IMG/VR virus record: IMGVR_UViG_3300034073_003340 | Span: 310,001-374,000 of that record | Reading direction: 5' to 3' (one strand) | DNA: 64,000 nt | Shown: piece after piece, positions 1,136-16,031 of the stretch | Numbering within the stretch: the stretch's first letter is position 1 | Layout of the letters: every line of letters begins with the position of its first letter | Made by a program: the position numbers and the translations under genes | The notes under the pieces: generated by a model | Told to the model about the DNA's origin: nothing | Databases searched by the model: none | What the model saw: only the letters and a program-made list of their open reading frames with translations

Positions 1136-1274
1136 TCAACGGGCAAGTTGCGAAAAGGATGTTTTTCGGTGTCCTAACCACTAGACGAACCCCGCATAAT
1201 ATAGAGCGGGGTATGGGATTCGAACCCATGTAACCGGCGTGATAAGCGATAACCCTTATCAGTCGGCCCGTTGA
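1136..1274 (-). ncRNA. Y-RNA-like element B enclosing a permuted tRNA-Asp-like module (ATC)
   Basis: TCAACGGGC-CGA...GGGTTATC / CTTGCCCGTTGA; ACCCCGC and GCGGGGT form a 7-bp acceptor stem in reversed order. Confidence 0.8.
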
Positions 1275-2869: not shown

Positions 2870-2894
2870 ATTTATAGGCTAGAAGCAAACGATA

Positions 2895-4401: not shown

Positions 4402-4405
4402 AGAT

Positions 4406-4474: not shown

Positions 4475-4477
4475 CCT

Positions 4478-4553: not shown

Positions 4554-4685
4554 ATGTGAGTGGTCCAATGTCTGTTGCCAGCACAGTCCCTTAGGGACTT
4601 CATTGGACCACTGATTTGTGTTTAACAAAAGTGGCCACCTTTGTCAAACTAAAACATTAGCCAGTACATCCGTGGTCTAATGTTT

Positions 4686-4756
4686 TGGAGCCCCAACTAG
4701 GATTCGAACCTAGCCTCCAGCGTTCGAAGCGCCGGGTCCCATCCATGGGCTGGGGC
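4686..4756 (-). tRNA. tRNA-Arg(TCG), short D-arm
   Basis: CGGCG-CTTCGAA-CGCTG arm, CCA, 71 nt. Confidence 0.82.
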
Positions 4757-4757
4757 A

Positions 4758-5054: not shown

Positions 5055-5105
5055 AAGTCACCTCCTACACCCAGATTATAACCAGGTGTAAGAGATGTCA
5101 ACACC

Positions 5106-5375
5106 TTACTTTTCAGAAAGTGGCTGAGTAGTGGCATATCGCAGCAAAGCGGTAATAATACCAACTACTGTCAGGATAACACCGCTATGCTCACCCATAA
5201 GGGCCTGCATCGAAGGCAAATAAATTTGAAGGGCGCCAAAAATAGTCAGTGCCGTTGAAAACCAAATCGTCTTAGACTTGGCCGCTTTGATTAGCCATGT
5301 CTTAGCGTTAATCCCCATTGCCTGAAGCATATCAAGATATGGGATAACATTTGGTTCTTTGCTTGGTTCAGTCAT
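5106..5375 (-). CDS. two-TM membrane protein, possibly holin-like
   Basis: Two hydrophobic segments, AAGGAG SD, TAAATA upstream. Confidence 0.5.
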   Translation of the reverse strand: MTEPSKEPNVIPYLDMLQAMGINAKTWLIKAAKSKTIWFSTALTIFGALQIYLPSMQALMGEHSGVILTVVGIITALLRYATTQPLSEK

Positions 5376-5418
5376 AGTCGATCTCCTTGTCAGAGTGTCG
5401 ACTATTTACCGCAATGGT

Positions 5419-5491
5419 ATATGGGCAAGTTGGTGGCCAGGGGCTTGGTTCAAAGTTTGAGTTTGATAACCCTGAGCCGTCCGGCCCATAT
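5419..5491 (-). ncRNA. Y-RNA-like element G (no tRNA module)
   Basis: ATATGGGC-CGG...GGGTTATC / CTTGCCCATAT. Confidence 0.7.
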
Positions 5492-5493
5492 TT

Positions 5494-5570
5494 TGGTTGC
5501 GGAGGACGGATTCGAACCGCCGACCTTTAGGTTATGAGCCTAACGAGCTACCAGGCTGCTCCACCCCGCG
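5494..5570 (-). tRNA. tRNA-fMet(CAT)
   Basis: C1:A72 mismatch, CT-CAT-AA, CCA. Confidence 0.92.
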
Positions 5571-5614
5571 TCAATACGATTAGCAAGAACTGTTTCTTGT
5601 GTCAATAATTTTTG

Positions 5615-5803
5615 TGGAGACGACGGGATTCGAACCCGCACGAAAAGCTGACCCAAGCATTACCAAGGGCTGGTGTGTAGGTTCAAAGACTCGTCGCGAG
5701 CCTATAAAAAATATCCCACACCATCTTACGCAACCTTTCAGGTTTTACCCTGAATCGCGGTCTTGTCTTTTGCGATTGCCTGTCCCTCTAGGCGGACGTC
5801 CCC
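5615..5803 (-). ncRNA. tmRNA-like or tRNA-Ala-like RNA with a ~115-nt internal domain
   Basis: Acceptor GGGGACG/CGTCTCC with G3:U70 and A73; T-arm GCGGG-TTCGAAT-CCCGT; no anticodon arm. Confidence 0.55.
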
Positions 5804-5829
5804 ATGTAGTGAATTTTTAGTCTACCAGG

Positions 5830-5902
5830 TACAGGGTGGGAGAATCGAACTCCCTTCTTCCGATTTTCAGCCGGCCGCATTGACCACAGTTGCTTACCCT
5901 GC
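5830..5902 (-). tRNA. tRNA-Phe(GAA)
   Basis: CT-GAA-AA loop; CCA not encoded. Confidence 0.85.
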
Positions 5903-5922
5903 ATGAGGGAGTAGACTCGCGC

Positions 5923-6291
5923 CTACTCCCCTTCGAACTTTGCCTTTAAGGCTTCGTAGAGCTTTCGCTCTTCGTCGTCCTTTTTCAGCTTCTTTGCGAG
6001 GGCGGTTGCTCGTCTCTTTTCAGCGGCAATCGCAGCTTTTGCCTTTTTGGCTTTCAGCTTTTCAATTCGCGTTTCATATTCATCATCCGTCTCCAGACGA
6101 TTACATGACAGACGAATTGTTACCTCACAATCATCATAATACCAGTTGGTTTCGACGTAGAGTTCTAAACCCTCGCCATACTGGGCTATGAGATCCGCCA
6201 GTTTGTAGGTTTCATGCGTGTTGAGGATTTCAACAGTATGTGATACATTCCGACGGGCAAGTTCTTTTTCGTTCAAATCAACCATATTCAC
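5923..6291 (-). CDS. hypothetical protein
   Basis: AGGAGG SD, basic coiled-coil C-terminus. Confidence 0.7.
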   Translation of the reverse strand: MNMVDLNEKELARRNVSHTVEILNTHETYKLADLIAQYGEGLELYVETNWYYDDCEVTIRLSCNRLETDDEYETRIEKLKAKKAKAAIAAEKRRATALAKKLKKDDEERKLYEALKAKFEGE

Positions 6292-6334
6292 CTCCTATTC
6301 CAACACAAAAGGATAGAGGTTTCCAAGGTATCAT

Positions 6335-6410
6335 TGGAGGCCCCAGTGGGAATCGAACCCACATAGATCCGCTTTGCAGGCGGTCACAATTCCCATTCTG
6401 TCATGGGGCC
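6335..6410 (-). tRNA. tRNA-Cys(GCA)
   Basis: CT-GCA-AA, U73, CCA. Confidence 0.88.
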
Positions 6411-6431
6411 ATGTTGCTGTTCAAAACAGCT

Positions 6432-6505
6432 TGGAGCGGGTGAAGGGAATCGAACCCTCGTCTTCAGCTTGGAAGGCTGTAATAATACCATTATACGACA
6501 CCCGC
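6432..6505 (-). tRNA. tRNA-Gly(TCC)
   Basis: CT-TCC-AA, U73, CCA. Confidence 0.92.
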
Positions 6506-6508
6506 GTG

Positions 6509-6670
6509 TCAGGTCTTCTTTGAGATGCCAAAACACCTGAGAAGCTTTGCCAAAAAGGGATGGCGCTCACTGAAGGTCAGCGGTCGAAACCAACAGTAAT
6601 CGTGAGCAATACCCTCACGAGTATCACAGCACCATTCTCCGTTTTCATCATAGTGATGATCTAGGTTCAT
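6509..6670 (-). CDS. small hypothetical protein
   Basis: Start MNLDHHYDENGEWCC after an AGAGG SD, lying between two tRNAs. Confidence 0.45.
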   Translation of the reverse strand: MNLDHHYDENGEWCCDTREGIAHDYCWFRPLTFSERHPFLAKLLRCFGISKKT

Positions 6671-6685
6671 CAAAGCCTCTTTGGT

Positions 6686-6763
6686 TGGAGCGGGTAACGG
6701 GAATCGAACCCGTCTCTTCACCATGGCAAGGTGACATAATCCAGACCAATATACTATACCCGC
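6686..6763 (-). tRNA. tRNA-Gly(GCC)
   Basis: TT-GCC-AT, U73, CCA. Confidence 0.9.
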
Positions 6764-6769
6764 GTGTTC

Positions 6770-6990
6770 AATCTTGAAGATCCGTAGCCGCGATCTTGTT
6801 CTATGCTACAATCTACCTACCTGAATATCACTATTCAAGTGCCTCGCCATTATGCGATGAGACCTTATTGGTCTCCGGCTGCGCCAACCCGACCATATAG
6901 CTGAAGGATTGCCATGGTCTGTTTGGCTTGCTGGCTTAATCACGGTGGTCTCTTCCCTTGTGCTGGTCTATTCGCCCAACTCCCACTCGT
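6770..6990 (-). ncRNA. rnpB: RNase P RNA, 3' piece
   Basis: P15 GCCAA/TTGGC with L15 GGU, P16 GACCAT/ATGGTC, P18 with GUGA loop, and the 3' strands of P2 (TGTAGC), P4 (TCGCGGCT) and P1 (CAAGATT). Confidence 0.8.
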
Positions 6991-7590
6991 TCACTTCTTA
7001 CGGTTTGTTTTTCTGGCCTTAATCAACTGAGAAGCTTTCTCTTTTCCGTGAATTTCTACTAGGGTTTTACCCTTTAGTTTGGCTCTGATATTATCTCCCC
7101 AACCCTCAGGGACCGTTCTCCCTTTAGACCACCCTTGCTTAGTCCAAGTATCAAGCTCATCCGACTTGATCTTTTTATTACCAAGTTCTGGATGAGTGAT
7201 CCATATAGATCCAAATTGGGTATTGTTAGAACCAACACCGACTTGTTTTAGTTGTCGGGTAGATTGTCTCTTCTTCTGAGCTTGTGGCGTTTGAGCAAAC
7301 TTTCGAGCAAATTCATACCCGCCGTCACCGCCCTTTGTCAAATTATAGGTATCAGTGCGGGCTACAAACTCTTCTGTAACGACCTCTTTCTCTTTCAGAT
7401 ACATTTCTGATCTTGAAGAAAAATTTTCTAGAACCTCCTTTTGAAAGTTCTCGATACCATACTTGGCAATAGCTGACTTGATAAGTTCTCCTGAACCCAT
7501 ATAGCCATCGTCTAAATCAGTAGTTGAATGAACCCCGATATAGATCTTGCCATTAATGAGATTGGTGATCTTGTAGAGTATGTAATTCAT
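6991..7590 (-). CDS. GIY-YIG homing endonuclease (Seg-like)
   Basis: YILYKITNLINGKIYIGVH...YMGSG...KYG.ENF.KEVLE...E...YN motifs; own TAAATA box. Confidence 0.9.
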   Translation of the reverse strand: MNYILYKITNLINGKIYIGVHSTTDLDDGYMGSGELIKSAIAKYGIENFQKEVLENFSSRSEMYLKEKEVVTEEFVARTDTYNLTKGGDGGYEFARKFAQTPQAQKKRQSTRQLKQVGVGSNNTQFGSIWITHPELGNKKIKSDELDTWTKQGWSKGRTVPEGWGDNIRAKLKGKTLVEIHGKEKASQLIKARKTNRKK

Positions 7591-7601
7591 ACTCTATTTA
7601 C

Positions 7602-7658
7602 CTCGTCGCGAACTTCCTCAAAAGCTTTCGCTCCTGCTGTAGCTCGACCTGCAAGATT
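7602..7658 (-). ncRNA. rnpB: RNase P RNA, 5' piece
   Basis: P1 AATCTTG, P2 GCTACA, P3 GGAGC-GAAA-GCTTT and CR-I-like GAGGAAGTTCGCGA, each pairing with the 3' piece. Confidence 0.8.
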
Positions 7659-7731
7659 GGTACGCCCACGAAGACTCGAACTCCGATAAACCGGTAATCG
7701 GCCGGTTGCCTTACCATTAGACGATGGGCGC
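7658..7731 (-). tRNA. tRNA-Ile(GAT), atypical C33
   Basis: ACCGG-CCGATTA-CCGGT arm, T-arm, CCA. Confidence 0.65.
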
Positions 7732-7735
7732 AAGC

Positions 7736-7919
7736 TTGATTCAAAAAGCGTGGCTTGGTTCCCCGTTTCAAGCACCACAAGCGACTCTATACCAATACTC
7801 CGCCGGAGCATTCAGTGCGCAACTCTGACTCTACCAGGTTCAAATCCTGGTCATAATATTCAGCAACCATACCCACGAGACCTTTGATGTCTGCGAAGGT
7901 ATCACGCTTTTTGAATCAA
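7736..7919. ncRNA. 184-nt region closed by a 17-bp inverted repeat
   Basis: TTGATTCAAAAAGCGTG/CACGCTTTTTGAATCAA. Confidence 0.4.
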
Positions 7920-7954
7920 TTGAATATAACAAAGGACATGGCCTTTGTCAACAT

Positions 7955-8028
7955 TGGAGCGGATAGGGAGAATCGAACTCCCCTAACTACGTTGGCAACG
8001 TAACGCATTACCACTATGCTATACCCGC
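7955..8028 (-). tRNA. tRNA-Gly(GCC)
   Basis: TT-GCC-AA, U73, CCA. Confidence 0.9.
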
Positions 8029-8195
8029 ATGGTATTTGCTGACCGGAACCTCTCGCCAACAGCGCAAGCTCACCACACTTCCGTGCCCGGCCATCTTGCC
8101 ATTTTTGCTCGACCGCTAGGTAGTCTGTGCCTCTAAAGGTTTCACATCCTACATCAGCAGATTTGTTCTAACAAATCGTAATCAATTTGTCAATC

Positions 8196-8274
8196 TGGGG
8201 TGACCGGCGGGAATTGAACCCAGCACCTTCGGCTTCACAGGCCGCTATCCACAAACCAGTAGACCACGGTCACC
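8196..8274 (-). tRNA. tRNA-His(GTG)
   Basis: G-1:C73, CT-GTG-AA, CCA. Confidence 0.9.
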
Positions 8275-8281
8275 ATACAGA

Positions 8282-8692
8282 TCAGAGGGCTTTGCCCGTC
8301 CTCGCATCAACAATTCTTACTCCTGGAAAAACTGCTAGGCTACCACTTTCTCCACCTTGGAAATAAGCGTCGTATCCTTTTGCTCGGAGTTCTCTAAAAA
8401 ACCCCGGTATCTTTTCCATTTCACCATAATACTCTTCTATTTCATCCTCTGTGGGATAGTAGATATTATGAACATCCAAATAGCAAGCATAGGTTTCGGC
8501 CAAATTGTCCCCGTAGATTTTCTCACCCCAAGTGGGCGAATCAGAGAACCATAAACCAGCATCTGGTATCTTGAACTTGGTAATATTCTTGGTATTACTA
8601 CCATGATACATGACGCTCTTGACCTTGGAGCCAGAGAACGGATTTGGAACAAACTGCTCCGAATCTTCACCAATGATTTGTTTCCATCGCAT
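8282..8692 (-). CDS. ADP-ribosyltransferase-like late protein
   Basis: MYHGS...F...GLWFSDSP..(IY)G motifs; TAAATA-N4-ATG; N-terminus MRWKQIIGE. Confidence 0.55.
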   Translation of the reverse strand: MRWKQIIGEDSEQFVPNPFSGSKVKSVMYHGSNTKNITKFKIPDAGLWFSDSPTWGEKIYGDNLAETYACYLDVHNIYYPTEDEIEEYYGEMEKIPGFFRELRAKGYDAYFQGGESGSLAVFPGVRIVDARTGKAL

Positions 8693-8705
8693 TGAATATT
8701 TATTC

Positions 8706-8793
8706 TGCTGAGCGCGGAGTCGAACCGCCTACCGTTTATGGCATCGCCCATCACTTCTTATTGATTCGTACTGGCCCGGCCAGCTACTCAGCA
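8706..8793 (-). pseudogene. tRNA-like RNA without a recognisable anticodon arm
   Basis: TGCTGAG/CTCAGCA acceptor and GGCGG-TTCGACT-CCGC T-arm. Confidence 0.5.
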
Positions 8794-8870
8794 TGGCCCT
8801 CTGGACGGGACTCGAACCCGCCTCGACCCGGCGTGACAAGCCAGCGGCGTCACCCGACGCCTCCCAGAGG
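8794..8870 (-). tRNA. tRNA-Asp(GTC)
   Basis: CTGGC-TTGTCAC-GCCGG arm, G73, CCA. Confidence 0.9.
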
Positions 8871-8924
8871 ATATGGTTTTCTGCTCTCAGAATGTCACGC
8901 CTAGTTTCAGCGGCGTTCCCTCGG

Positions 8925-8997
8925 TGGAGACTAGGGGGATCGAACCCCTGACCTACGCAATGCCATCGCGTCGCTCTCCCAGCTGAGCTAAGTCCCC
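8925..8997 (-). tRNA. tRNA-Ala(GGC)
   Basis: G3:U70, AT-GGC-AT loop. Confidence 0.9.
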
Positions 8998-9007
8998 ATG
9001 GGAGGGG

Positions 9008-9632
9008 TCACAAGGACCCCTTGGCTAGGATCAGTCTTTCTAGACCAATTGCCCAGCCAACACCTTCGGCGTATCTACCGCCTCCAGCGATTTGTTTTTG
9101 CGCGCCAAGCTGCTCGCATACGCCTTCGAATCCATCCTCTATATAATAGGATAATCCGCGTTTTACAGCGTCATTGAGCTGCCACTCGACCCCTTGAGAG
9201 TCAATACAGCGTCGCAGTAGCTCAACAACTTCGTCGCGGTCCTCAGGGCCCTGTGAGCCCAGATACTCTACGCCAAATTGTATGAACTCCCGATACCGGC
9301 CTGCTTGTGGGCGCTCGTATCGGTAACAACGACTCACATAGAAGATCTTTAGTGTCTTTTCTGTGTGTCGCCATTTTTCTCGCCAGAGCTCTTGGATGAG
9401 CCCGGTGACTTCGGGAATCAAGCAAACATCTCGACCTCCCTTATCCTGGAAGGCCCACATTTGATTGATTATCTCTGGACCGGCTTTGTCGATGAAAGTC
9501 TGTTGTTCCCATATTGCGGGCAGAATAACCTCGTTGAAACCAGCTTCAGTGAACCAACCCCCTCAAGGAGTTGATTACATTGGTCATTTCACGGGCGTCG
9601 TCGCCCATGAGGACCCTTGTTCCCCTTAGCAT
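9008..9632 (-). CDS. hisS: histidyl-tRNA synthetase catalytic core only, frameshifted at a G5 run (9558-9562)
   Basis: MLRGTRVL, then after the shift GFNEVILP (motif 1), CYRYERPQAGRYREF (motif 2) and GGGRY...AIGLERL (motif 3); no anticodon-binding domain. Confidence 0.75.
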
Positions 9633-9668
9633 AAATCACCTCTTGTTTTCAGCGACCCTAATGGTCGT

Positions 9669-9742
9669 TGGATGCCCCTCTAGGGATCGAACCTAGGTTA
9701 CAACATTCAAAGTGTCGTGTCTTACCATTAGACGAAGGGGCA
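9669..9742 (-). tRNA. tRNA-Gln(TTG)
   Basis: CT-TTG-AA, CCA. Confidence 0.9.
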
Positions 9743-9753
9743 ATGTAGAGACC

Positions 9754-9813
9754 TGAGCAAGTTGATGCGGCGAGGGGTTCATCACCAAAAGATAACCCTC
9801 ATGCTTCGGCTCA
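9754..9813 (-). ncRNA. Y-RNA-like element C (no tRNA module)
   Basis: TGAGC-CGA-AGCATGAGGG-TTATC...CCCTCG...CAACTTGCTCA. Confidence 0.7.
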
Positions 9814-9819
9814 AATCTA

Positions 9820-9895
9820 TGGCTCCGGAGGAGGGACTCGAACCCCCAACATCCTCGTTAACAGCGAGGCGCATCTACCATTGAGCTACTCCGGA
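9820..9895 (-). tRNA. tRNA-Asn(GTT)
   Basis: CT-GTT-AA, G73, CCA. Confidence 0.92.
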
Positions 9896-9899
9896 ATGA

Positions 9900-10015
9900 A
9901 TATGAGCAAGTTTTGTAAAGGACTTTCCCAGTTGCCTGGGGTGATGGATTTGAACCATCTAGTTTTGATTTGAAGTCAAAAGTTTTTCCGATAACCCTTT
10001 ACTATCGGCTCATAT
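9900..10015 (-). ncRNA. Y-RNA-like element D with a TCA anticodon arm, T-arm and loop-closed acceptor
   Basis: ATATGAGC-CGA...GGGTTATC / CTTGCTCATAT; TTTTGA-CTTCAAA-TCAAAA arm. Confidence 0.75.
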
Positions 10016-10088
10016 GGCGCCCTCGGGAGGATTCGAACCTACCTCATCTTCCCTTCGCAGGGGAAGTGCATGATCCACATGCGAGGGC
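10015..10088 (-). tRNA. tRNA-Arg(GCG), short D-arm
   Basis: TTCCC-CTGCGAA-GGGAA arm, CCA. Confidence 0.8.
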
Positions 10089-10093
10089 ATTAG

Positions 10094-10165
10094 TAGTCCC
10101 GTGGTGACTCGAACACCAATCCGCCCTTTATGAGAGGGTGGCACTAACCTTTGTGCTACAGGACC
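10094..10165 (-). tRNA. tRNA with CAT anticodon (Met or Ile2)
   Basis: CT-CAT-AA loop with paired position 1. Confidence 0.8.
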
Positions 10166-10168
10166 ATA

Positions 10169-10244
10169 TGGTGAACCGGGCGGGACTCGAACCCGCGACC
10201 AGCTGATTAAAAGTCAGCTGCTCTACCGACTGAGCTACCGGTCC
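10169..10244 (-). tRNA. tRNA-Lys(TTT)
   Basis: Canonical, CT-TTT-AA, CCA. Confidence 0.95.
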
Positions 10245-10300
10245 ACTCCAGCTCTCTTTAGCTAAAGATTTCCGTTAGTCAAAGATTTTTCTTACACCAA

Positions 10301-10753
10301 CTACTTTAAAATCACCGGTATGTTCATTTTCTTAGCCAGATCTTCAACCTGGTCTCGAAAATATTCATCATCGTCCTGTCCACCTTCGTCTCTTATCCAT
10401 ATCTCCTTGACTGTAGAGGAGTTTATTGGATAAAGAGGTGATGGTTCTATCACCGTTTCATCTTCGGGACGGGTCCCCAAAATGATTCGGACTTCATCCC
10501 AACGATCAACCACTTGCGTTTCAAAACCCTTGGGGGCTTTTAGCACAAATGTCACATTGGCTGAATTCTTTACACCACCAGAGAACCAAAGATTGGGATC
10601 AGTAGTGGTTGAAACAAAATATTCAACATTGCGATCATGGTCGATGTCGTCATAGCTGGTATGGATGCCACCGTCTCTTAATATTGAAAGGGCAGGCCTC
10701 ATATCAGTAGCATGATACAAAACACCGCCAGTCAAGACTTCATATAACCGCAT
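10301..10753 (-). CDS. ART-fold-like late protein
   Basis: LYHAT...SIL..GG...FVSTTTDP...DEVRI; TAAATA-N5-ATG; N-terminus MRLYEVL. Confidence 0.5.
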   Translation of the reverse strand: MRLYEVLTGGVLYHATDMRPALSILRDGGIHTSYDDIDHDRNVEYFVSTTTDPNLWFSGGVKNSANVTFVLKAPKGFETQVVDRWDEVRIILGTRPEDETVIEPSPLYPINSSTVKEIWIRDEGGQDDDEYFRDQVEDLAKKMNIPVILK

Positions 10754-10765
10754 ATCTGTATTTAT

Positions 10766-10841
10766 TGGTGGGAGCCGTGGGGATTGAACCCACCTCGTTC
10801 TGCTTGTAAAACAGATGTCATCACCAGATGGCTAGACTCCC
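10766..10841 (-). tRNA. tRNA-Val(TAC)
   Basis: TT-TAC-AA, CCA. Confidence 0.88.
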
Positions 10842-10842
10842 A

Positions 10843-10917
10843 TGGTAGTCGGTGAGGGTTTCGAACCCCCGACCCTCTCGGTGTAAACGAGATGCTCTAC
10901 CACTGAGCTAACCGACC
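10843..10917 (-). tRNA. tRNA-Val(TAC)
   Basis: TT-TAC-AC, CCA. Confidence 0.92.
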
Positions 10918-10957
10918 ATGTTATCAACATAAACAATCCTATTTGGAATGTCAATAT

Positions 10958-11040
10958 TGGTGGGAAGCAATGGAGTCGAACCATTCCCCGAAAGCGCGGT
11001 TTTACAGACCGCTTGCTAGAACCGCTAGCTTTTACTTCCC
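10958..11040 (-). tRNA. tRNA-Tyr(GTA)
   Basis: GCGGT-CTGTAAA-ACCGC, CCA. Confidence 0.88.
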
Positions 11041-11054
11041 ATATTTGTAATCAG

Positions 11055-11126
11055 TAGCGCGGACGGGAATCGAACCCGCTTACACCTGGGTGAAAACCAA
11101 GCCGCCTGCCATTAGCGTTCCGCGCC
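11055..11126 (-). tRNA. tRNA-Glu(TTC)
   Basis: TT-TTC-AC loop; CCA not encoded. Confidence 0.8.
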
Positions 11127-11137
11127 ATGAAGTATTG

Positions 11138-11209
11138 TGACCCATAGGGGGATCGAACCCCTGTTCTCGCCTTGAAAGGGCGCGCTCTTAACCATTAGAG
11201 GAATGGGCC
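11138..11209 (-). tRNA. tRNA-Glu(TTC)
   Basis: CT-TTC-AA loop; ends CAA. Confidence 0.88.
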
Positions 11210-11240
11210 GTGTGGGCAAATACCCTGCTGACTTACAGCT

Positions 11241-11315
11241 TGGTGGACGATACAGGGATTGAACCTGTGACCTTTCCCATGTCAAGGGAACGCGCTACCG
11301 CTGCGCCAATCGTCC
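11241..11315 (-). tRNA. tRNA-Val(GAC)
   Basis: TTCCC-TTGACAT-GGGAA, CCA. Confidence 0.92.
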
Positions 11316-11318
11316 ATA

Positions 11319-11984
11319 TCAAGCAAACAAGGAATTTTTTGCTTGAATCTTATTACCATTTGAATCAATACCTGGATACCCGTGATTCTGTAAAATCACA
11401 TGGGCCGCTGCCTTGAGACGCAACCTCGGGAAATCTTTGGTATAGAGGATCAAAGAGTAGGTTAGCTTTTCTTCACAACCGCCACCTGATCCAGTATTGA
11501 TTCCGATCCTTTTTAGGTGGTCAGAATGAATTAAATGCTTTCGGTAAACATTTCCTTTGGGGCGAATTATAATCTTGCCCTCCCAACCCGCTTCCGGAAC
11601 GTGGGGTGACTCACTACTCCAACCAGTTTCTTTCTGACCAATAGGAGAAGTGTGGGTCGTTGGACAAAGTGGGTTGAAGTTCAAATTTGAGATTTCAAAT
11701 TCAACATAATCACTAGCGGTTGGATAATAGGGATTTTTAGCTTCCCAACGTGGTCCAAAGTGTATGGCGATCTTCATGTAATTGGCTGTCAGCCACTCCG
11801 CAATTGCGTTAGTGGTATCCAGACAATACAAAGACTTCAAAAACTCATCGAACTCAAGAGCCAACTTGGACTGTTCGCGCTTGAAGCGCAAATCAAAACG
11901 AGTTCGCTTCAAGTGCTCAGCATATTCACTGGAGCACTCAAAAAGCTTACCGGTCCAAGGGCACTTGTTAACAATTACCTTCAT
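11319..11984 (-). CDS. hypothetical protein
   Basis: 221-aa ORF filling the gap between tRNAs. Confidence 0.75.
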   Translation of the reverse strand: MKVIVNKCPWTGKLFECSSEYAEHLKRTRFDLRFKREQSKLALEFDEFLKSLYCLDTTNAIAEWLTANYMKIAIHFGPRWEAKNPYYPTASDYVEFEISNLNFNPLCPTTHTSPIGQKETGWSSESPHVPEAGWEGKIIIRPKGNVYRKHLIHSDHLKRIGINTGSGGGCEEKLTYSLILYTKDFPRLRLKAAAHVILQNHGYPGIDSNGNKIQAKNSLFA

Positions 11985-12020
11985 GCCAACTGAGTAGCAT
12001 AAAAAGACCAGTTGTCAACA

Positions 12021-12107
12021 TGGTTGCAGAGGTGGGATTTGAACCCACGTAGCCTTTCGGCAGCCTCGGTTATGAGCCGAGCGAGATAACCACTCCTCTA
12101 CCCTGCG
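12021..12107 (-). tRNA. initiator-like tRNA(CAT) with a long variable arm
   Basis: C1:A72, CT-CAT-AA, GCC-GAAA-GGC variable stem, CCA. Confidence 0.8.
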
Positions 12108-12109
12108 AG

Positions 12110-12182
12110 TGCAACCAGTTGGAATCGAACCAACGACACGCGCATTTTCAGTGCGCTGCTCTACCTGCTGAGCTATGGTTAC
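12110..12182 (-). tRNA. tRNA-Phe(GAA)
   Basis: GCGCA-CTGAAAA-TGCGC. Confidence 0.9.
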
Positions 12183-12183
12183 A

Positions 12184-12259
12184 TGGACCTAACAGGGGCA
12201 TTTCAGCCCTCACTTTCTGACCAGCGTGGCGGTCAGCCGTGCCTCTTACACTAGTTAGG
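12184..12259 (-). pseudogene. tRNA-like RNA, 8-nt anticodon loop, non-canonical T-loop
   Basis: CCTAAC/GTTAGG acceptor, CTGACC-GCCACGCT-GGTCAG, CCA. Confidence 0.5.
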
Positions 12260-12262
12260 ATT

Positions 12263-12339
12263 TGGTGCCGACACCTGGAATCGAACCAGGAAAATCACCC
12301 TTATGAGAGGTAATAGGAGACCGCCTCCTTCCTACCGGC
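12263..12339 (-). tRNA. tRNA with CAT anticodon (Met or Ile2)
   Basis: CT-CAT-AA, CCA. Confidence 0.78.
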
Positions 12340-12345
12340 AAAGTT

Positions 12346-12420
12346 TGGCACGGGTGGAGGGATTCGAACCCTCTCTGCATGGTTTTGGAGACCAGCCGAC
12401 TACCAGTATCATACACCCAT
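12346..12420 (-). tRNA. tRNA-Trp(CCA)
   Basis: CT-CCA-AA, G73, CCA. Confidence 0.88.
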
Positions 12421-12435
12421 ATGAAAGATTTTTAG

Positions 12436-12506
12436 CAGGGCCAGTAGGAATCGAACCCACAAGAGCTGGTTTGGAGCCAACCATGATACCATTTCATCAT
12501 AACCCT
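12436..12506 (-). tRNA. tRNA-Trp(CCA)
   Basis: CT-CCA-AA, G73. Confidence 0.85.
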
Positions 12507-12529
12507 ATAGGTCAGAAAAGCTGACACAG

Positions 12530-12598
12530 TGGAAGCCTGGGATTTGAACCCACCAAACGGCTTTTATTCACCGTCATGCACCAAAACATCTGGCCCCC
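12530..12598 (-). pseudogene. tRNA-like RNA, Ala-type acceptor, 8-nt loop
   Basis: GGGGGCC/GGCTTCC-A, ACGGT-GAATAAAA-GCCGT, TTCAAAT T-loop. Confidence 0.5.
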
Positions 12599-12626
12599 AT
12601 GGAGGACGGATAGTAATCCGTCTTTG

Positions 12627-12697
12627 CGCAGCATGGGGGAATCGAACCCACCACCTCCAGGATTCCGCCTGGTATGCTAAACCTACAACATAGCCGC
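12627..12697 (-). pseudogene. tRNA-like RNA, 6-nt anticodon loop (Pro-like)
   Basis: CCAGG-CGGAAT-CCTGG, TTCGATT T-loop, imperfect acceptor. Confidence 0.45.
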
Positions 12698-12698
12698 A

Positions 12699-12783
12699 TG
12701 GTGGGTAGGTGCGGAATCGAACCACTCCCCGAAGGATCTGATTTACAGTCAGACTGCCGTATCCAAGACGACTTTACCTACCC
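12699..12783 (-). tRNA. tRNA-Tyr(GTA)
   Basis: TCTGA-CTGTAAA-TCAGA, variable arm, CCA. Confidence 0.88.
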
Positions 12784-12787
12784 ATAG

Positions 12788-12867
12788 AGGACCAGGTGGG
12801 ACTCGAACCCACGATGTATAATAGCCGGTTAAAAGCCGACGCCGATCGCCGCTACGGTGACTGGTCC
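12788..12867 (-). tRNA. tRNA-Lys(TTT)
   Basis: CT-TTT-AA, extended variable loop. Confidence 0.8.
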
Positions 12868-12873
12868 AAAGAT

Positions 12874-12951
12874 TGGTCAGGGTGAGAGGACTCGAACCTC
12901 CACGATGTCCTCCTTCCAAAGGAGACGACTTACCAATTAGTCCACACCCTG
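12874..12951 (-). tRNA. tRNA-Pro(TGG)
   Basis: TT-TGG-AA, C1-G72, CCA. Confidence 0.9.
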
Positions 12952-13087
12952 ATGTGGTCAAGACTTGCTAGATATATTGCTGTCCCGCATGGGACACCTG
13001 CCCGTCGGGGAGTCGAACCCTTCCGGTTGGGGACTTGAACCCCGCTTCACCCTAGCACCTACCCACTCGGTAGCTTTCGCTAAGTCT

Positions 13088-13161
13088 TGGTGCTTCAGCA
13101 AGGAATCGAACCTTGGTCGTGCCATTATCAGTGGCGTGCTCTACCATTGAGCTACAGAAGC
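13088..13161 (-). tRNA. tRNA-Ile(GAT)
   Basis: CT-GAT-AA, CCA. Confidence 0.92.
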
Positions 13162-13166
13162 ATGAT

Positions 13167-13294
13167 CGATGAGCAAGGAGGTGTGCTAGGAGATTGACTA
13201 GGTCCTACCCCGGCCCTCATTGTGGACCGGCCGAGACTCGAACTCGGATCGTTTGTTTCACAGACAAAGATAACCTAACGCTATCGGCTCATCG
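13167..13294 (-). ncRNA. Y-RNA-like element E enclosing a permuted tRNA-His-like module (GTG)
   Basis: CGATGAGC-CGA...GGTTATC / CTTGCTCATCG; TTTGT-CTGTGAA-ACAAA arm, T-arm, CCGGTCC then GGGCCGG. Confidence 0.8.
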
Positions 13295-13295
13295 G

Positions 13296-13378
13296 TGCGG
13301 ATGACTGGACTCGAACCAGCACGCCACTAGGGCACCGCCTTCTGAGGACGGCAAGTCTACCAATTTCATCACATCCGC
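13296..13378 (-). tRNA. tRNA-Leu(CAG)
   Basis: CT-CAG-AA, long variable arm. Confidence 0.9.
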
Positions 13379-13400
13379 ATGTAAAAGGCTTGTGAACCTT

Positions 13401-13477
13401 TGGTGCTCCCCGTGGGACTCGAACCCACACTGAACGGAGTTTGAACCCGCTGACTCTACCAATTGGCCTAGAGGAGC
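13401..13477 (-). tRNA. tRNA-Leu(CAA), short variable arm
   Basis: TT-CAA-AC, CCA. Confidence 0.85.
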
Positions 13478-13496
13478 ATGACACTGGCTAACAGCT

Positions 13497-13581
13497 TGGT
13501 GCGGATAGTGGGACTCGAACCCACACGCCCTAAGGCACAGGCCTCTCATGCCTGCAAGTCTACCAGTTTCATCATATCCGC
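13497..13581 (-). tRNA. tRNA-Leu(GAG)
   Basis: AT-GAG-AG, long variable arm, CCA. Confidence 0.88.
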
Positions 13582-13652
13582 ATAGTCAACAAAGTGTCAA
13601 TATTAACGACCTTTACTCTTACCTCCCGGAACGGTCAAGCGGGCGACTTTGT

Positions 13653-13727
13653 TGGTGCCCCATCCAAGAATCGAACTTGGATCTACGCCTTACCAAGGCG
13701 TTATAATAACCATTATAATAATGGGGC
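13653..13727 (-). tRNA. tRNA-Thr(GGT)
   Basis: ACGCC-TTGGTAA-GGCGT, CCA. Confidence 0.92.
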
Positions 13728-13728
13728 A

Positions 13729-13803
13729 TGGAGCAGGTAGAGGGGATCGAACCCTCTTCTACGGTTTGGAAGACCATCATAATAACCAATATACTATACC
13801 TGC
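13729..13803 (-). tRNA. tRNA-Gly(TCC)
   Basis: CT-TCC-AA, U73, CCA. Confidence 0.9.
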
Positions 13804-13804
13804 A

Positions 13805-13881
13805 TGGTGTCCATGGAGAGATTCGAACTCTCACTGTCTGCATTCTAAGCGCAGTGCCTCTTCCGATTGGGCTACATGGAC
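13805..13881 (-). tRNA. tRNA-Leu(TAG), short variable arm
   Basis: CT-TAG-AA, CCA. Confidence 0.88.
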
Positions 13882-13882
13882 A

Positions 13883-13980
13883 TGGCAGAGAGCAGAGGAC
13901 TTGAACCTCAAGCGCATGTAGGGGTAAATGGCGCTCACATGATTTTCATCAGCCCAGCGACCTCGCTGGTTTTACTCTCT
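13883..13980 (-). tRNA. Ser-like tRNA (TGA uncertain), degenerate anticodon arm
   Basis: G73, CCA, very long variable arm, 7-bp D-stem; anticodon loop does not fit 7 nt. Confidence 0.5.
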
Positions 13981-13981
13981 A

Positions 13982-14058
13982 TGGTAGATGATCAGGGGTT
14001 CGAACCCTGGACCTACGGTTTAAGAGACCGTCGCTACTACCAACTGAGCTAATCATCC
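13982..14058 (-). tRNA. tRNA-Lys(CTT)
   Basis: ACGGT-CTCTTAA-ACCGT, CCA. Confidence 0.92.
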
Positions 14059-14180
14059 ATAAGGGGCGCCACTAGCTTGTTCGTTTCCCTGGCGTGCCAT
14101 GGCGCCCAGCCAACAGCACTAGGGAGAAACCTTGCTTAAGGGTTTCGTAAGCATTGCCCCGTCCGACAATACTTGGAACT

Positions 14181-14254
14181 TGGATGCCCATCGAGGATTC
14201 GAACCTCGGTTGACCGGTTCAGAGCCGGGTCTCTTACCGTTAGAGGAATGGGCA
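14181..14254 (-). tRNA. tRNA-Gln(CTG)
   Basis: CT-CTG-AA, CCA. Confidence 0.9.
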
Positions 14255-14268
14255 ATAAGAGATAAAGT

Positions 14269-14342
14269 TGGTAGCCCCAACGGGGATCGAACCCGTTTCG
14301 CCGCCTTGAGAGGGCAGCAGCTTACCAATAGAAGATGGGGCC
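14269..14342 (-). tRNA. tRNA-Glu(CTC)
   Basis: CT-CTC-AA, CCA. Confidence 0.88.
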
Positions 14343-14343
14343 A

Positions 14344-14431
14344 TGGAGGACCAGGTGGGGTTCGAACCCACAAGGGACTTTCATCCGTCGCATTAAGAGT
14401 GCGGTGAGCCAACCAACTGCTCAACTGGTCC
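14344..14431 (-). tRNA. tRNA-Lys(CTT) with a long variable arm
   Basis: CT-CTT-AA, GGA-TGAAAG-TCC variable stem, CCA. Confidence 0.8.
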
Positions 14432-14436
14432 ATGAT

Positions 14437-14573
14437 CAACGGGCAAGTGGTGAAAAGGATGTTTTTCCCGGCTTTACCAATTTGCCTATCCCCCGTCAAT
14501 GGTCGGGGGAGGAGGACTTGAACCTCCAAACAGGGTCTCCTAATGACGATAACCCTTATCAATCGGCCCGTTG
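14437..14573 (-). ncRNA. Y-RNA-like element F enclosing a permuted tRNA-Leu-like module (TAG)
   Basis: CAACGGGC-CGA...GGGTTATC / CTTGCCCGTTG; TCCCCCG-A-CCA-TTGA-CGGGGGA. Confidence 0.8.
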
Positions 14574-14648
14574 GTCTAGGTGAGAGGATTCGAACCTCCA
14601 ATCCCTTGCTCCCGAAGCAAGTGCCTTACCAGATTAGGCCACACCTAG
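14572..14648 (-). tRNA. tRNA-Pro(CGG)
   Basis: CTTGC-TTCGGGA-GCAAG, CCA. Confidence 0.92.
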
Positions 14649-14679
14649 ATGATAGTTTACCGACATTTCGGTCAATATC

Positions 14680-14756
14680 TGGCTCCCAATGTAGGACTCG
14701 AACCTACAGCATCGACGTTAACAGCGTCGCTCCCCTACCGACAGGGACCATTGGGA
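14680..14756 (-). tRNA. tRNA-Asn(GTT)
   Basis: CGACG-CTGTTAA-CGTCG, CCA. Confidence 0.9.
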
Positions 14757-14780
14757 ATGGAATAAACCACTTTGGTTTAT

Positions 14781-14852
14781 TGGTGGAGCATAAGAGAATC
14801 GAACTCTTCCTACCGCGGTGCAAGCGCAGCGACTAGACCCACTAGATGCCCC
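14781..14852 (-). tRNA. tRNA-Ala(TGC), short D-arm
   Basis: G3:U70, CT-TGC-AC, CCA, 72 nt. Confidence 0.8.
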
Positions 14853-14920
14853 AAAAGGGATTGCCCGCCCCATCGGGTTTGTCCGCATTAGGCTAACTTT
14901 CAGGACTTGTTAGCTAACAG

Positions 14921-14989
14921 TGGATATCTTGGACTCGAACCATTTTCTCCAGCTAGACGCTGGCGCATTACCATATATGCTACCAATCC
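14921..14989 (-). pseudogene. degenerate tRNA with a 5-nt loop containing CTA
   Basis: CCAGC-GTCTA-GCTGG, D-arm and T-loop present, weak acceptor. Confidence 0.45.
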
Positions 14990-14992
14990 ATT

Positions 14993-15069
14993 TGGTCGGG
15001 ATAGCAGGACTCGAACCTGCGACCTCTTGTCCCCCAGACAAACGCGCTACCAGGCTGCGCTATACCCCG
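14993..15069 (-). tRNA. tRNA-Pro(GGG)
   Basis: CT-GGG-GG, C1-G72, CCA. Confidence 0.92.
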
Positions 15070-15506
15070 ATGATTTGGCCTTTTGTTTGTGATATGCGAA
15101 ATATATTCCCTGGCACTTCAGGGTGATCCGCATGAGGAAGGATTACTCCTTTCCCCTGTGCCTAAAGAACGGCGCATCACTACACCGTCCAATTTTTACT
15201 CCCACGTTCTCTCCGTGGTTTCATCCTTGGCCCGCCCATATGGGTTTATTTTAAGTGGCTATCCCGCAGTCTCGTTCCGCATATACCACTTGACAATTCA
15301 GGGAACCTGCACTAGGCATTTTCCTTGAAAGGTCGATCTATATCACACTAAGAAACTTTCGTTCCTTGGTGCTACGTCGTTGTGCCTTGTGGACATCAAC
15401 TCCGTTTTTGAGTTTAGCAGCTTCTTTTTGCTGTGTCAACAACTTTTTTGTTGCTGCTAAACTTTTTTGTTTGTGCCTTCTGCGCTAGCATCGGGCGGTT
15501 AAAAGG

Positions 15507-15533
15507 AAAGCCCCGGTAGTTTCCTACCGGGGC
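15507..15533 (-). terminator. intrinsic terminator
   Basis: GCCCCGGTAG/CTACCGGGGC followed by a T-rich tract on the minus strand. Confidence 0.65.
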
Positions 15534-15566
15534 CTTGTTTCCTTTTATGGGATGGACTTTTTGGAG

Positions 15567-15770
15567 TTATCCTCCGTGTCCCTCCTGGAAACTGGCCCCG
15601 GTCGTATCAAGATTCGCAGGCTTATTATAACCGACGAGTGTCCCGACTGGGCGGGTAATTTGTTCGCTACGCTGCCATTCGGCGCCCATAGCGGAGGCGG
15701 TAAACAACACGGCTTTCAGGCCGGCCTTTCCGCATTCCATATGGGTTCCAATATGCGACATAGAAATCAA
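15567..15770 (-). CDS. possible small late protein
   Basis: TATAAATA upstream, GAGG SD and a downstream terminator; no recognisable motif. Confidence 0.35.
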   Translation of the reverse strand: MISMSHIGTHMECGKAGLKAVLFTASAMGAEWQRSEQITRPVGTLVGYNKPANLDTTGASFQEGHGG

Positions 15771-15958
15771 TTACCTCAAATTCTGTGATGCCCGAATTGG
15801 CATCTGTGTTTCTATTTATACTGAACGATTCATTCGTCAAGCACAAAATGACCACAAAGCAAAAAAGTTTTCTACTTTGCTTCCAAGGGGCTTAATGTAC
15901 TCCTTGGACTTTAGTTGCAAGCCCTTAGAAAAATAAATTTCAAAGCCTACAACCTTTG

Positions 15959-16031
15959 TGGAGAATATCGGACTCGAACCGATCACCTACGCCTTGCAAA
16001 AGCGTCGCTCTCCCAGATGAGCTAATCCCCC
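15959..16031 (-). tRNA. tRNA-Ala(TGC)
   Basis: G3:U70, TT-TGC-AA; ends CAA. Confidence 0.9.

What the first reader, a model, noticed from the sequence alone, without database searches (positions are those of the whole stretch)
13167..13294. Element E keeps an intact His (GTG) anticodon arm
Seen: TTTGT-CTGTGAA-ACAAA, a canonical T-arm and a 7-bp permuted acceptor. The D-arm is reduced to TAG-GAC-CTA and the scaffold joins at about 26/27. Established: YrlA-type RNAs replace the anticodon arm with the Ro-binding stem. Inference: this is a second topology in which the anticodon stays exposed. The window also has a normal tRNA-His and a HisRS core lacking its anticodon domain.
Basis: partly seen in the sequence, partly recalled or inferred. 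Interest (0 to 1): 0.62.

Follow-up and report, generated by a model that had tools for sequence, protein, structure and literature searches.

The report
Phage Y RNA keeping an anticodon-like arm
Element E is not a tRNA-His gene but one of at least six Ro60-type "Y RNA" genes hidden in the tRNA array of a 436-kb phage. Its tRNA-like half keeps a conserved anticodon-like hairpin, but the three "anticodon" letters differ in every related phage, so the His reading carries no meaning.

Summary
On the minus strand of 13167-13294 there is a 5-bp/7-nt anticodon-like hairpin, a canonical T-arm, and a 7-bp acceptor helix closed by a loop. An outer helix carries the Ro60-binding motif (GCCGA with a bulged C, opposite CUUG).

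Three syntenic orthologues in other huge phages keep every helix through compensatory changes, scoring 134-150 bits with a model built from the four copies. A wider alignment of 46 phage YrlA-like RNAs supports all helices (97% paired, 0/500 shuffles).

The loop is always C-U-NNN-A-A, but the triplet is GUG, GCA, UUG or UGA in the four orthologues. The "His" identity is therefore nominal, and ARAGORN's tRNA-His call is a forced fit.

E is not unique:
- Element G (9900-10015) has the same whole-hairpin layout.
- Elements B and D carry the same 7-nt U33/A37 loop, on a stem that is split by the scaffold.

The phage and all five complete relatives encode Ro60. A cultured relative, Sinorhizobium phage Phosso, has other types of these RNAs.

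Most likely E is a Ro60-bound tRNA mimic released by tRNA-processing enzymes. It is a new variant of the known YrlA kind. Function was not tested, and I found no link to HisRS.

The parts
13284..13294 (-). P1 5' strand with the Ro60-binding motif (GAGC-C-GA, bulged C)
   Evidence: Pairs with 13167-13176. Across 46 family members the helix is 97.5% paired, and 6 of 10 pairs change on both sides. The same motif occurs in an RNA next to the Ro60 gene.
13274..13279 (-). P2 5' strand (GUUAGG), extending the scaffold
   Evidence: Pairs with 13185-13190. It covaries in the orthologues, for example UAGCG/CGCUA in L020. In A3 all 5 pairs change on both sides.
13269..13273 (-). UUAUC junction motif (the YUAY motif of YrlA RNAs)
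   Evidence: Present in nearly all of the 46 aligned elements. YUAY is described as the start of the V region in PMC4201824.
13252..13268 (-). Anticodon-like arm UUUGU-CUGUGAA-ACAAA
   Evidence: 100% paired in the 4 orthologues, with one U-A to A-U swap. Loop positions 1, 2, 6 and 7 are invariant and the triplet varies.
13248..13251 (-). CGAU, a 4-nt variable-loop equivalent
   Evidence: Invariant in the 4 orthologues. The spacer is 4 nt in 26 and 5 nt in 8 of the 36 elements with a 7-nt loop.
13231..13247 (-). T-arm CCGAG-UUCGAGU-CUCGG
   Evidence: 3 of 5 pairs change on both sides among the orthologues. It aligns to the T-arm of Rfam tRNA and YrlA.
13210..13230 (-). Acceptor-like 7-bp helix closed by the loop ACAAUGA
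   Evidence: 3 of 7 pairs change on both sides. A strain variant differs only at the last loop base, 13217.
13191..13209 (-). Degenerate D-arm region (GG UAGGACCUAG UCAAUCU)
   Evidence: No conserved helix. The orthologues read GUCGYGGUGGCUAGUAAA here.
13185..13190 (-). P2 3' strand (CCUAGC)
   Evidence: See the P2 5' strand.
13167..13176 (-). P1 3' strand (UU GCUCAUCG, holding the CUUG half of the Ro site)
   Evidence: See the P1 5' strand. tRNA-Ile starts 5 nt downstream at 13161.
9900..10015 (-). Element G: a second YrlA-like RNA with a whole anticodon-like hairpin (6 bp, loop CUUCAAA), a short acceptor helix and no D-arm
   Evidence: R1 scores 44 bits; fold. Orthologues in L038 and L041 have loops CUUAUAA and CUCAUAC with covarying stems.
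14437..14573 (-). Element D: YrlA-like RNA with a canonical D-arm and a 7-nt loop AUUAGGA on a split stem
   Evidence: Rfam YrlA gives 23.2 bits full length and R1 gives 47.9 bits. GG after the D-arm completes the stem.
1137..1273 (-). Element B: YrlA-like RNA resembling a permuted tRNA-Glu, loop UUAUCAC, stem split at 29/30
   Evidence: R1 scores 45.5 bits. CCG after the D-arm pairs with CGG after the hairpin. It resembles tRNA-Ser|tRNA-Glu gene junctions and the phage tRNA-Glu.
671..814 (-). Element A: YrlA-like RNA of class-II tRNA type, with no 7-nt-loop hairpin found after UUAUC
   Evidence: R1 scores 28.8 bits; fold; row in the table.

Best explanation
Element E is a gene for a YrlA-like Y RNA of a 436-kb phage. 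It is a small non-coding RNA in two halves.

1. The outer helix P1, extended by P2, carries the Ro60 recognition site: GCCGA with a bulged C, opposite CUUG. I infer that it binds the phage's own Ro60 protein.

2. The inner half is a circularly permuted tRNA look-alike. It has an anticodon-like arm, a 4-nt variable loop, a T-arm, a 7-bp acceptor helix closed by a loop, and a decayed D-arm. The scaffold enters between tRNA positions 26 and 27.

E is transcribed within the tRNA array. I infer that it is released by the enzymes that trim its neighbours: 3' processing of tRNA-Leu one or two bases upstream, and RNase P at tRNA-Ile five bases downstream.

The likeliest role is a Ro60-tethered tRNA mimic that engages host or phage tRNA-binding proteins, including ones that read the shape of an anticodon loop. 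That would serve RNA surveillance or repair, or act as a decoy.

Shown here: the structure, its conservation, the family relationship, and the co-occurrence with Ro60. Inferred: Ro60 binding, processing and role. The GUG triplet is not a conserved identity.
For: Structure:
- All helices are present and fold better than any of 200 shuffles.
- The four syntenic orthologues, always between tRNA-Leu and tRNA-Ile, keep them through compensatory changes. 95% of cells are paired, and covariation exceeds all 500 shuffles and every slid register.

Family:
- A model built from the four copies also finds elements D, B, G and A in the window and 46 elements in 27 sources.
- Across those 46, 97% of cells are paired and 27 of 32 pairs change on both sides.
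- Rfam YrlA aligns element D full length, with the extra hairpin as an insertion after the YUAY position.

Anticodon-likeness:
- 36 aligned rows have exactly a 7-nt loop (three are tRNA or T-loop segments the model swept in), with U at loop position 2 in all 36 and A at position 6 in 31.
- The spacer to the T-arm is 4 nt in 26 and 5 nt in 8.
- In B- and D-type elements, the 3' nucleotides left unpaired by the short hairpin pair with the nucleotides right after the D-arm in 16 of 21 testable cases (only 11 have a remainder of 2-3 nt; one-base remainders are trivial). One of these is a CCG/CGG to GAG/CUC swap.

Ro60 link:
- The genome encodes a 600-aa TROVE + Ro60-vWA protein.
- All 4 complete metagenomic relatives and the cultured phage Phosso do too.
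- An RNA with the same P1/P2/UUAUC scaffold lies just upstream of the Ro60 gene in three genomes.

Precedent:
- YrlA RNAs are known in phages. M. smegmatis YrlA, which has a 7-bp acceptor stem, is cut by RNase P and receives CCA in vivo (PMC4201824).
- A phage Ro60 binds phage Y-like RNAs and host PNPase (PMC12135203).
Against: - No expression or binding data. The only RNA-labelled runs hold small shares as contigs and show nothing about RNA ends.
- E scores only 18.4 bits against Rfam YrlA, whose gathering score is 69.
- E lacks the conserved D-arm that Wang et al. consider part of the effector site.
- E lies about 308 kb from the Ro60 gene, whereas classical Y RNAs are adjacent to it.
- P1 is invariant among the four E-type copies, so its covariation comes only from the wider family.
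- RNAalifold prefers an alternative local hairpin (GAUAG/UUAUC) to P2 in the four-sequence alignment.
- The varying triplet may mean the loop is simply unconstrained there.
Confidence: 0.68

Rival explanations
1. The same secondary structure holds, but the hairpin is the YrlA 'V' (variable) stem-loop. In three dimensions P2 would play the anticodon stem, as in the Salmonella YrlA crystal structure, and the hairpin would project sideways like the long variable arm of a class II tRNA. No anticodon would be displayed.
For: - The hairpin starts right after the YUAY motif, where Chen et al. place the V stem-loop of 'many' YrlA RNAs.
- AUC before and GAU after the hairpin could lengthen it to 8 bp with a bulged C.
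- The D-arm that would stack on an anticodon stem is degenerate in E.
Against: - The loop is exactly 7 nt with U at position 2 and A at position 6 throughout the family, and a 4-5-nt spacer precedes the T-arm. These are anticodon-arm and class I variable-loop dimensions. Class II variable arms have 3-5-nt loops (my own knowledge).
- In B- and D-type elements the hairpin's 3' strand continues into a helix with the nucleotides after the D-arm, which is what an anticodon stem does.
- Element A has a separate triloop hairpin abutting the T-arm that looks like a true variable arm.
Confidence: 0.2
2. E is a real but degenerate tRNA-His gene or pseudogene, as ARAGORN calls it (13222-13298).
For: ARAGORN calls tRNA-His(gtg). 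The Rfam tRNA model gives 27.9 bits, just under its gathering score of 29.
Against: - The call borrows 5 nt of the upstream tRNA-Leu.
- It has 2 mismatches in 7 acceptor pairs and no proper D-arm.
- The acceptor 3' strand pairs perfectly with a downstream segment instead, and that pairing covaries in the orthologues.
- The orthologue in L041 is 'called' tRNA-Ser, and two others are not called at all.
- The phage already has a good tRNA-His.
Confidence: 0.04
3. E is a circularly permuted tRNA gene. Its transcript would be circularised at the outer helix and reopened at the acceptor loop to give a working tRNA, as in Cyanidioschyzon.
For: - Re-permuting E in silico gives a stable ARAGORN tRNA-His call at 7 of 22 cut lengths.
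- Wang et al. raise this possibility for YrlA RNAs.
- The phage encodes Rnl1- and Rnl2-type RNA ligases.
Against: - The outer helix carries the conserved Ro60 site, not a bulge-helix-bulge motif.
- No splicing endonuclease is known in bacteria.
- The D-arm is degenerate.
- The discriminator is A, the base before position 1 is A (C in a strain variant), and there is no G-1:C73, the main HisRS identity mark (my own knowledge).
- The triplet differs among syntenic orthologues, which is unlike a decoding tRNA kept at one locus.
Confidence: 0.05

Closest known systems
YrlA (Y RNA-like A; Rfam RF02553) of bacteria and mycobacteriophages
   Same: - A Ro60-site helix formed by the 5' and 3' ends.
- The YUAY motif.
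- T-arm placed 5' of the D region.
- An acceptor-like helix closed by a loop.
- Co-occurrence with a Ro60/TROVE gene.
- Location among tRNA genes.
   Different: - Canonical YrlA has no anticodon loop, and its anticodon stem continues into the scaffold. E has a complete 5-bp/7-nt hairpin, and the scaffold branches off at 26/27.
- E's D-arm is degenerate.
- Both strands of the Ro site (GCCGA and CUUG) are recognisable, as in Deinococcus and animal Y RNAs.
- E is far from the Ro60 gene.
- E falls well below the Rfam threshold.
Deinococcus radiodurans Yrn1
   Same: A Y RNA that Chen et al. model with a T-arm and a potential 'anticodon arm' with a 5-bp stem. Both strands of the Ro site are kept.
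   Different: - Yrn1's loop is 6 nt.
- The stem-loop between its T and D arms takes the anticodon position rather than the acceptor position, so the orientation is opposite.
- It has no 7-bp acceptor helix.
Circularly permuted tRNA genes (Cyanidioschyzon merolae and some archaea)
   Same: The 3' half of the tRNA is encoded before the 5' half, the acceptor stem is initially closed by a loop, and the ends of the precursor pair with each other.
   Different: Those precursors carry a bulge-helix-bulge motif and mature into decoding tRNAs. E carries a Ro60 site, has a decayed D-arm, and has no conserved anticodon.
Yrl1/Yrl2 of Thermus phage phiLo
   Same: Phage-encoded Y-like RNAs shown to bind a phage Ro60 and, with it, host PNPase.
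   Different: They are encoded next to the Ro60 gene, are described as stem-bulge-stem RNAs, and the paper nowhere mentions 'tRNA-like'.

Membership tests
Y RNA (Ro60-binding ncRNA) | Helix formed by the 5' and 3' ends that carries the conserved Ro60 site (GNCGA-type 5' strand with a bulged C) | tested here: met
   GAGC-C-GA pairs with CUUGCUC. The helix covaries across 46 elements (GGGC/GCCC, GAGC/GCUC, AAGC/GCUU). The sixth base of the GNCGAA motif is U in E.
Y RNA (Ro60-binding ncRNA) | A Ro60/TROVE protein encoded by the same genome | tested here: met
   A 600-aa TROVE + vWA_Ro60 ORF. It is also present in all 5 complete relatives tested.
Y RNA (Ro60-binding ncRNA) | Gene adjacent to the Ro60 gene | tested here: not met
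   E lies about 308 kb away, in the tRNA array. A different RNA with the same scaffold sits next to Ro60, at G000:C1:15732-15885.
Y RNA (Ro60-binding ncRNA) | Physical binding to Ro60 | not testable with these tools
   Needs EMSA or co-immunoprecipitation.
YrlA (RF02553) | Score at or above the Rfam gathering threshold (69 bits) | tested here: not met
   18.4 bits, partial. Even the better element D reaches only 23.2 bits.
YrlA (RF02553) | Conserved T-arm followed by a closed acceptor-like stem-loop | tested here: met
YrlA (RF02553) | Conserved D-arm with the GG that forms the tRNA elbow | tested here: not met
   Only a 19-nt remnant without a conserved helix. Elements B, D and A in the same window do have it.
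YrlA (RF02553) | Anticodon stem formed by the scaffold strands, with no anticodon loop | tested here: not met
   E has a cis hairpin with a 7-nt loop at that position.
tRNA (RF00005), as tRNA-His | Colinear cloverleaf at or above 29 bits, with a paired acceptor stem and the His identity pair G-1:C73 | tested here: not met
   27.9 bits, 2 acceptor mismatches, no D-arm, discriminator A.
Circularly permuted tRNA gene | Bulge-helix-bulge motif at the paired precursor ends, and an anticodon conserved at the locus | tested here: not met
   The ends form the Ro-site helix, with internal loops of 4 and 7 nt. The triplet differs in all four syntenic copies.

The most novel reading that the evidence does not exclude
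Huge phages carry batteries of Ro60-tethered, nearly complete tRNA look-alikes. [quoted passage not shown] Their real anticodon loops, with fast-changing triplets, would serve as sacrificial decoys or sensors for host anticodon nucleases, or as guides for repair by the phage Rnl1/Rnl2 ligases. The triplet turnover among orthologues would then reflect an arms race rather than neutral drift.
Probability: 0.1. Interest if true: 0.85.

Novelty: new variant of a known kind. Interest (0 to 1): 0.55.

Why it matters
- Y RNAs are thought to descend from tRNAs, but canonical YrlA lacks the anticodon loop. These phage RNAs keep it, with the Ro-binding scaffold branching from different points of the anticodon stem (26/27, 27/28 or 29/30). 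One of them (B) still looks like a permuted tRNA-Glu. That gives a graded series for testing how a tRNA became a Y RNA.
- The unknown effector of the tRNA-like domain may read anticodon-loop shape.
- Gene finders mislabel these elements as tRNAs with arbitrary identities (His here, Ser in a relative). This inflates and distorts the tRNA repertoires reported for huge phages.
- A cultured relative, Sinorhizobium phage Phosso, carries members of the family together with Ro60, so the biology can be tested at the bench.

Tried and rejected
- Megablast of 4 kb of the array against cultured phages found only short tRNA matches. Blastn of E alone found nothing.
- A broad pattern (GGTTATCTTT ...
The E-type proper therefore rests on four genomes.
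- MAFFT misaligned the more distant L030 copy, so I left it out of the seed.
- RtcB is absent from the phage.
- The review PMC10870794 is not held.
- Laid contigs show presence and strain variants but say nothing about RNA ends or expression.
- The promoter and terminator scan was no better than shuffles.
- I considered and rejected a 'first-tRNA D-arm' (GAUAG/UUAUC, which RNAalifold prefers). It is invariant in the E-type, absent from most other family members, and competes with P2, which does covary.
- The idea that E derives from tRNA-His found no support: other tRNAs align better.
- The re-permutation test with ARAGORN is soft, because ARAGORN is permissive and I ran no shuffled control.

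Full report
**Setting**

The window is bases 310001-374000 of a 435,856-bp virus record with direct terminal repeats and 46% G+C. The DNA occurs in subsurface and soil metagenome runs. ARAGORN finds 59 tRNA genes in the genome. Fifty of them lie on the minus strand of window 484-16031.

**What is at 13167-13294**

On the minus strand the element reads, 5' to 3':
- An 8-bp outer helix P1, followed by a bulged C and G.U and A-U pairs.
- A 6-bp helix P2.
- The motif UUAUC.
- A hairpin with a 5-bp stem and the loop CUGUGAA.
- CGAU.
- A canonical T-arm.
- A 7-bp acceptor-like helix closed by a 7-nt loop.
- A 19-nt stretch where a D-arm would be.
- The 3' strands of P2 and P1.

The minimum-energy fold is better than all 200 shuffles (z = -2.79).

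ARAGORN calls a tRNA-His at 13222-13298. That call overlaps the upstream tRNA-Leu by 5 nt, has two mismatches in the acceptor stem, and has no proper D-arm. The Rfam tRNA model gives 27.9 bits, below its gathering score of 29. The acceptor 3' strand instead pairs perfectly with a segment downstream.

**Family**

The same permuted module (T-arm plus closed 7-bp acceptor helix) occurs four more times nearby, all on the minus strand: window 671-814 (A), 1137-1273 (B), 14437-14573 (D), and one copy about 2 kb upstream of the window.

All have ends that pair through GGGC-C-GA / CUUGCCC, or GAGC-C-GA / CUUGCUC in E. This is the bulged helix through which Ro60 recognises Y RNAs. The motif is described as GNCGAA(N)G in PMC4201824.

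Rfam YrlA aligns element D over its full length at 23.2 bits, well under its threshold of 69. E aligns only in part, at 18.4 bits.

The genome encodes a complete Ro60 orthologue of 600 aa with TROVE and Ro60-vWA domains, at genome 13338-15140.

**Orthologues and covariation**

A degenerate pattern scan of IMG/VR returned 43 loci, and more than 30 related elements passed my structural filter. Most lie in tRNA arrays of phage contigs of 277-480 kb.

Three are clear orthologues of E: L020:2741-2869, L028:2619-2747 and L041:6453-6583. In all four phages the element sits between tRNA-Leu and tRNA-Ile(gat), within the same run of tRNA genes.

On the four-sequence alignment:
- 95% of cells pair.
- 10 of 32 pairs change on both sides.
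- The covariation score exceeds all 500 shuffles and every slid register.
- The anticodon-like stem is 100% paired, with one U-A to A-U swap.
- RNAalifold independently predicts that hairpin, the T-arm and the acceptor helix.

A covariance model built from the four copies (R1) scores them at 134-150 bits. It also finds D, B, A and a sixth element, G (9900-10015), in the window.

Aligned to the model, 46 elements from 27 sources pair in 97% of cells, and 27 of 32 pairs change on both sides (0 of 500 shuffles reach this). That alignment is fitted to the model and therefore leans towards it.

**The 'anticodon'**

In the four orthologues the loop is C-U-NNN-A-A. The four flanking positions are invariant. 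The triplet is GUG (here), GCA, UUG or UGA.

In the closest relative, whose B, A and D elements are nearly identical to ours, the triplet is GCA. A strain variant present in the source study differs within E only at 13217 (acceptor loop) and 13283 (next to GCCGA).

E's 3' two-thirds aligns no better to the phage tRNA-His than to several other tRNAs. ARAGORN labels the L041 copy tRNA-Ser and does not call two of the others.

So the His reading has no conserved meaning. The nearby HisRS-like ORF is a 150-184 aa fragment covering profile positions 23-144 of 308, and I found nothing that ties it to E.

**E is not alone in keeping such a loop**

Of the 46 aligned rows, 36 have a loop of exactly 7 nt right after UUAUC. 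About three of these are tRNA or T-loop segments that the model swept in. Among the 36:
- Loop position 2 is U in all.
- Position 6 is A in 31.
- The spacer between the 5-nt 3' strand and the T-arm is 4 nt in 26 and 5 nt in 8.

These are the dimensions of an anticodon arm followed by a class I variable loop.

In E, G and a few others, the whole 5-bp stem is formed by the hairpin. In the B and D types the hairpin has only 2-3 pairs. The next 2-3 nucleotides then pair with those immediately after the D-arm, in 16 of 21 testable cases. One case is a CCG/CGG to GAG/CUC swap; cases with a one-base remainder are trivial.

I read this as one anticodon-like stem whose 5' strand is interrupted by the Ro scaffold at 29/30 (B, D), at 27/28 (the L017, L018 and L028 type), or at 26/27 (E and G). 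Element A has no 7-nt-loop hairpin after UUAUC, and I read it and the upstream copy as closer to the canonical layout without such a loop.

**Relation to the literature**

- YrlA RNAs are known in phages. [quoted passage not shown]
- The Salmonella crystal structure 'lacks the anticodon loop' (10.1101/312249).
- The same authors favour an origin from dimeric tRNA transcripts and note the likeness to permuted tRNA genes.

The hairpin in E therefore sits where V sits. What is new is that in these phages it has anticodon-arm dimensions and conserved U33- and A37-like positions.

Fitting a tRNA origin, the T-arm/acceptor/D-arm stretch of B matches the junction of adjacent tRNA-Ser and tRNA-Glu genes in T4-like phages at 76-80% identity. 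Re-permuted B aligns best, though modestly, to the phage tRNA-Glu.

I found no paper in the held library that describes anticodon-like loops in phage Y RNAs.

**Link to Ro60, and likely mechanism**

- All four complete metagenomic relatives and the cultured Sinorhizobium phage Phosso encode TROVE proteins. The 60%-complete record does not show one.
- Phosso has at least three unannotated elements of this family, but no E-type.
- An RNA with the same P1/P2/UUAUC scaffold but no T-arm lies just upstream of the Ro60 gene here (genome 15732-15885). Weak model matches lie at the same place in two relatives.
- E begins one or two bases after the discriminator of tRNA-Leu and ends five bases before tRNA-Ile, so tRNA processing would release it.
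- No minus-strand terminator-like site lies between tRNA-Leu(gag) at 13581 and position 12607.
- M. smegmatis YrlA, the one studied YrlA with a 7-bp acceptor stem, is cut by RNase P and receives CCA in vivo. A phage Ro60 binds phage Y-like RNAs and host PNPase.
- The phage also encodes Rnl1- and Rnl2-type RNA ligases but no RtcB.

I therefore commit to this: E is a Ro60-bound tRNA mimic whose tRNA-like half presents an anticodon-loop shape to tRNA-binding proteins. Binding, processing and role are inferences.

**Verdict**

- The topological reading is partly supported. E differs from canonical YrlA, but it is shared with other elements in the same window, and in three dimensions it could still be a variable-arm-like branch.
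- The His and HisRS reading is not supported.
- E is a new variant of a known kind.

Noticed in passing
window 12952-13087 (minus strand): A 136-nt element between tRNA-Pro and tRNA-Ile with two T-arm-like hairpins (loops UUCAAGU and UUCGACU) and pairing ends. The three relatives have only 8-23 nt between these two tRNAs, so it looks like an insertion specific to this phage.
   Followed up: partly
G000:C1:15732-15885 (minus strand), outside the window: A Y-RNA-like element just upstream of the Ro60 gene. It has the same GAGCCGA...GGGUUAUC / UCC...CUUGCUC scaffold but no T-arm. Weak model matches lie at the same place in two relatives.
   Followed up: partly
G000:C1:99130-99204 and 293258-293333 (minus strand), outside the window: ARAGORN calls two tRNAs with anticodon CUA (amber suppressor type). 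I did not test whether the phage reads TAG as a residue, and I used no alternative genetic code.
   Followed up: no
window T-loops at 394, 586, 1709, 8717, 10030, 10973, 12541 and 13898 (minus strand): Good T-arms with a matching acceptor 5' strand upstream at unusual distances (47-74 nt). They may be tRNA-like genes that ARAGORN and Rfam do not call.
   Followed up: no
window 9008-9460 (open frame to about 9556), minus strand: A HisRS-like ORF of 150-184 aa matching only profile positions 23-144 of 308 (PF13393). It may be a truncated catalytic-core fragment. A GIY-YIG endonuclease-like ORF (6991-7590) and an ADP-ribosyltransferase-like ORF (8282-8692) also lie within the array.
   Followed up: partly
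window 1137-1273 (element B); PV764938.1 24187-24322: B's T-arm/acceptor/D-arm stretch is 76-80% identical to tRNA-Ser|tRNA-Glu gene junctions in T4-like Proteus and Shigella phages. B has a 77%-identical unannotated counterpart in the cultured 469-kb Sinorhizobium phage Phosso.
   Followed up: partly
G000:C1:34802-35281 (+) and 104443-104898 (-), outside the window: The phage encodes Rnl2-type and T4 Rnl1-type RNA ligase domains, which suggests a tRNA repair capacity. RtcB is absent.
   Followed up: no
window 13224-13298, in runs X3 and X4: Contigs from the same study carry the E orthologue of the 465-kb relative (the L041 type), so two related huge phages co-occur in those samples.
   Followed up: no
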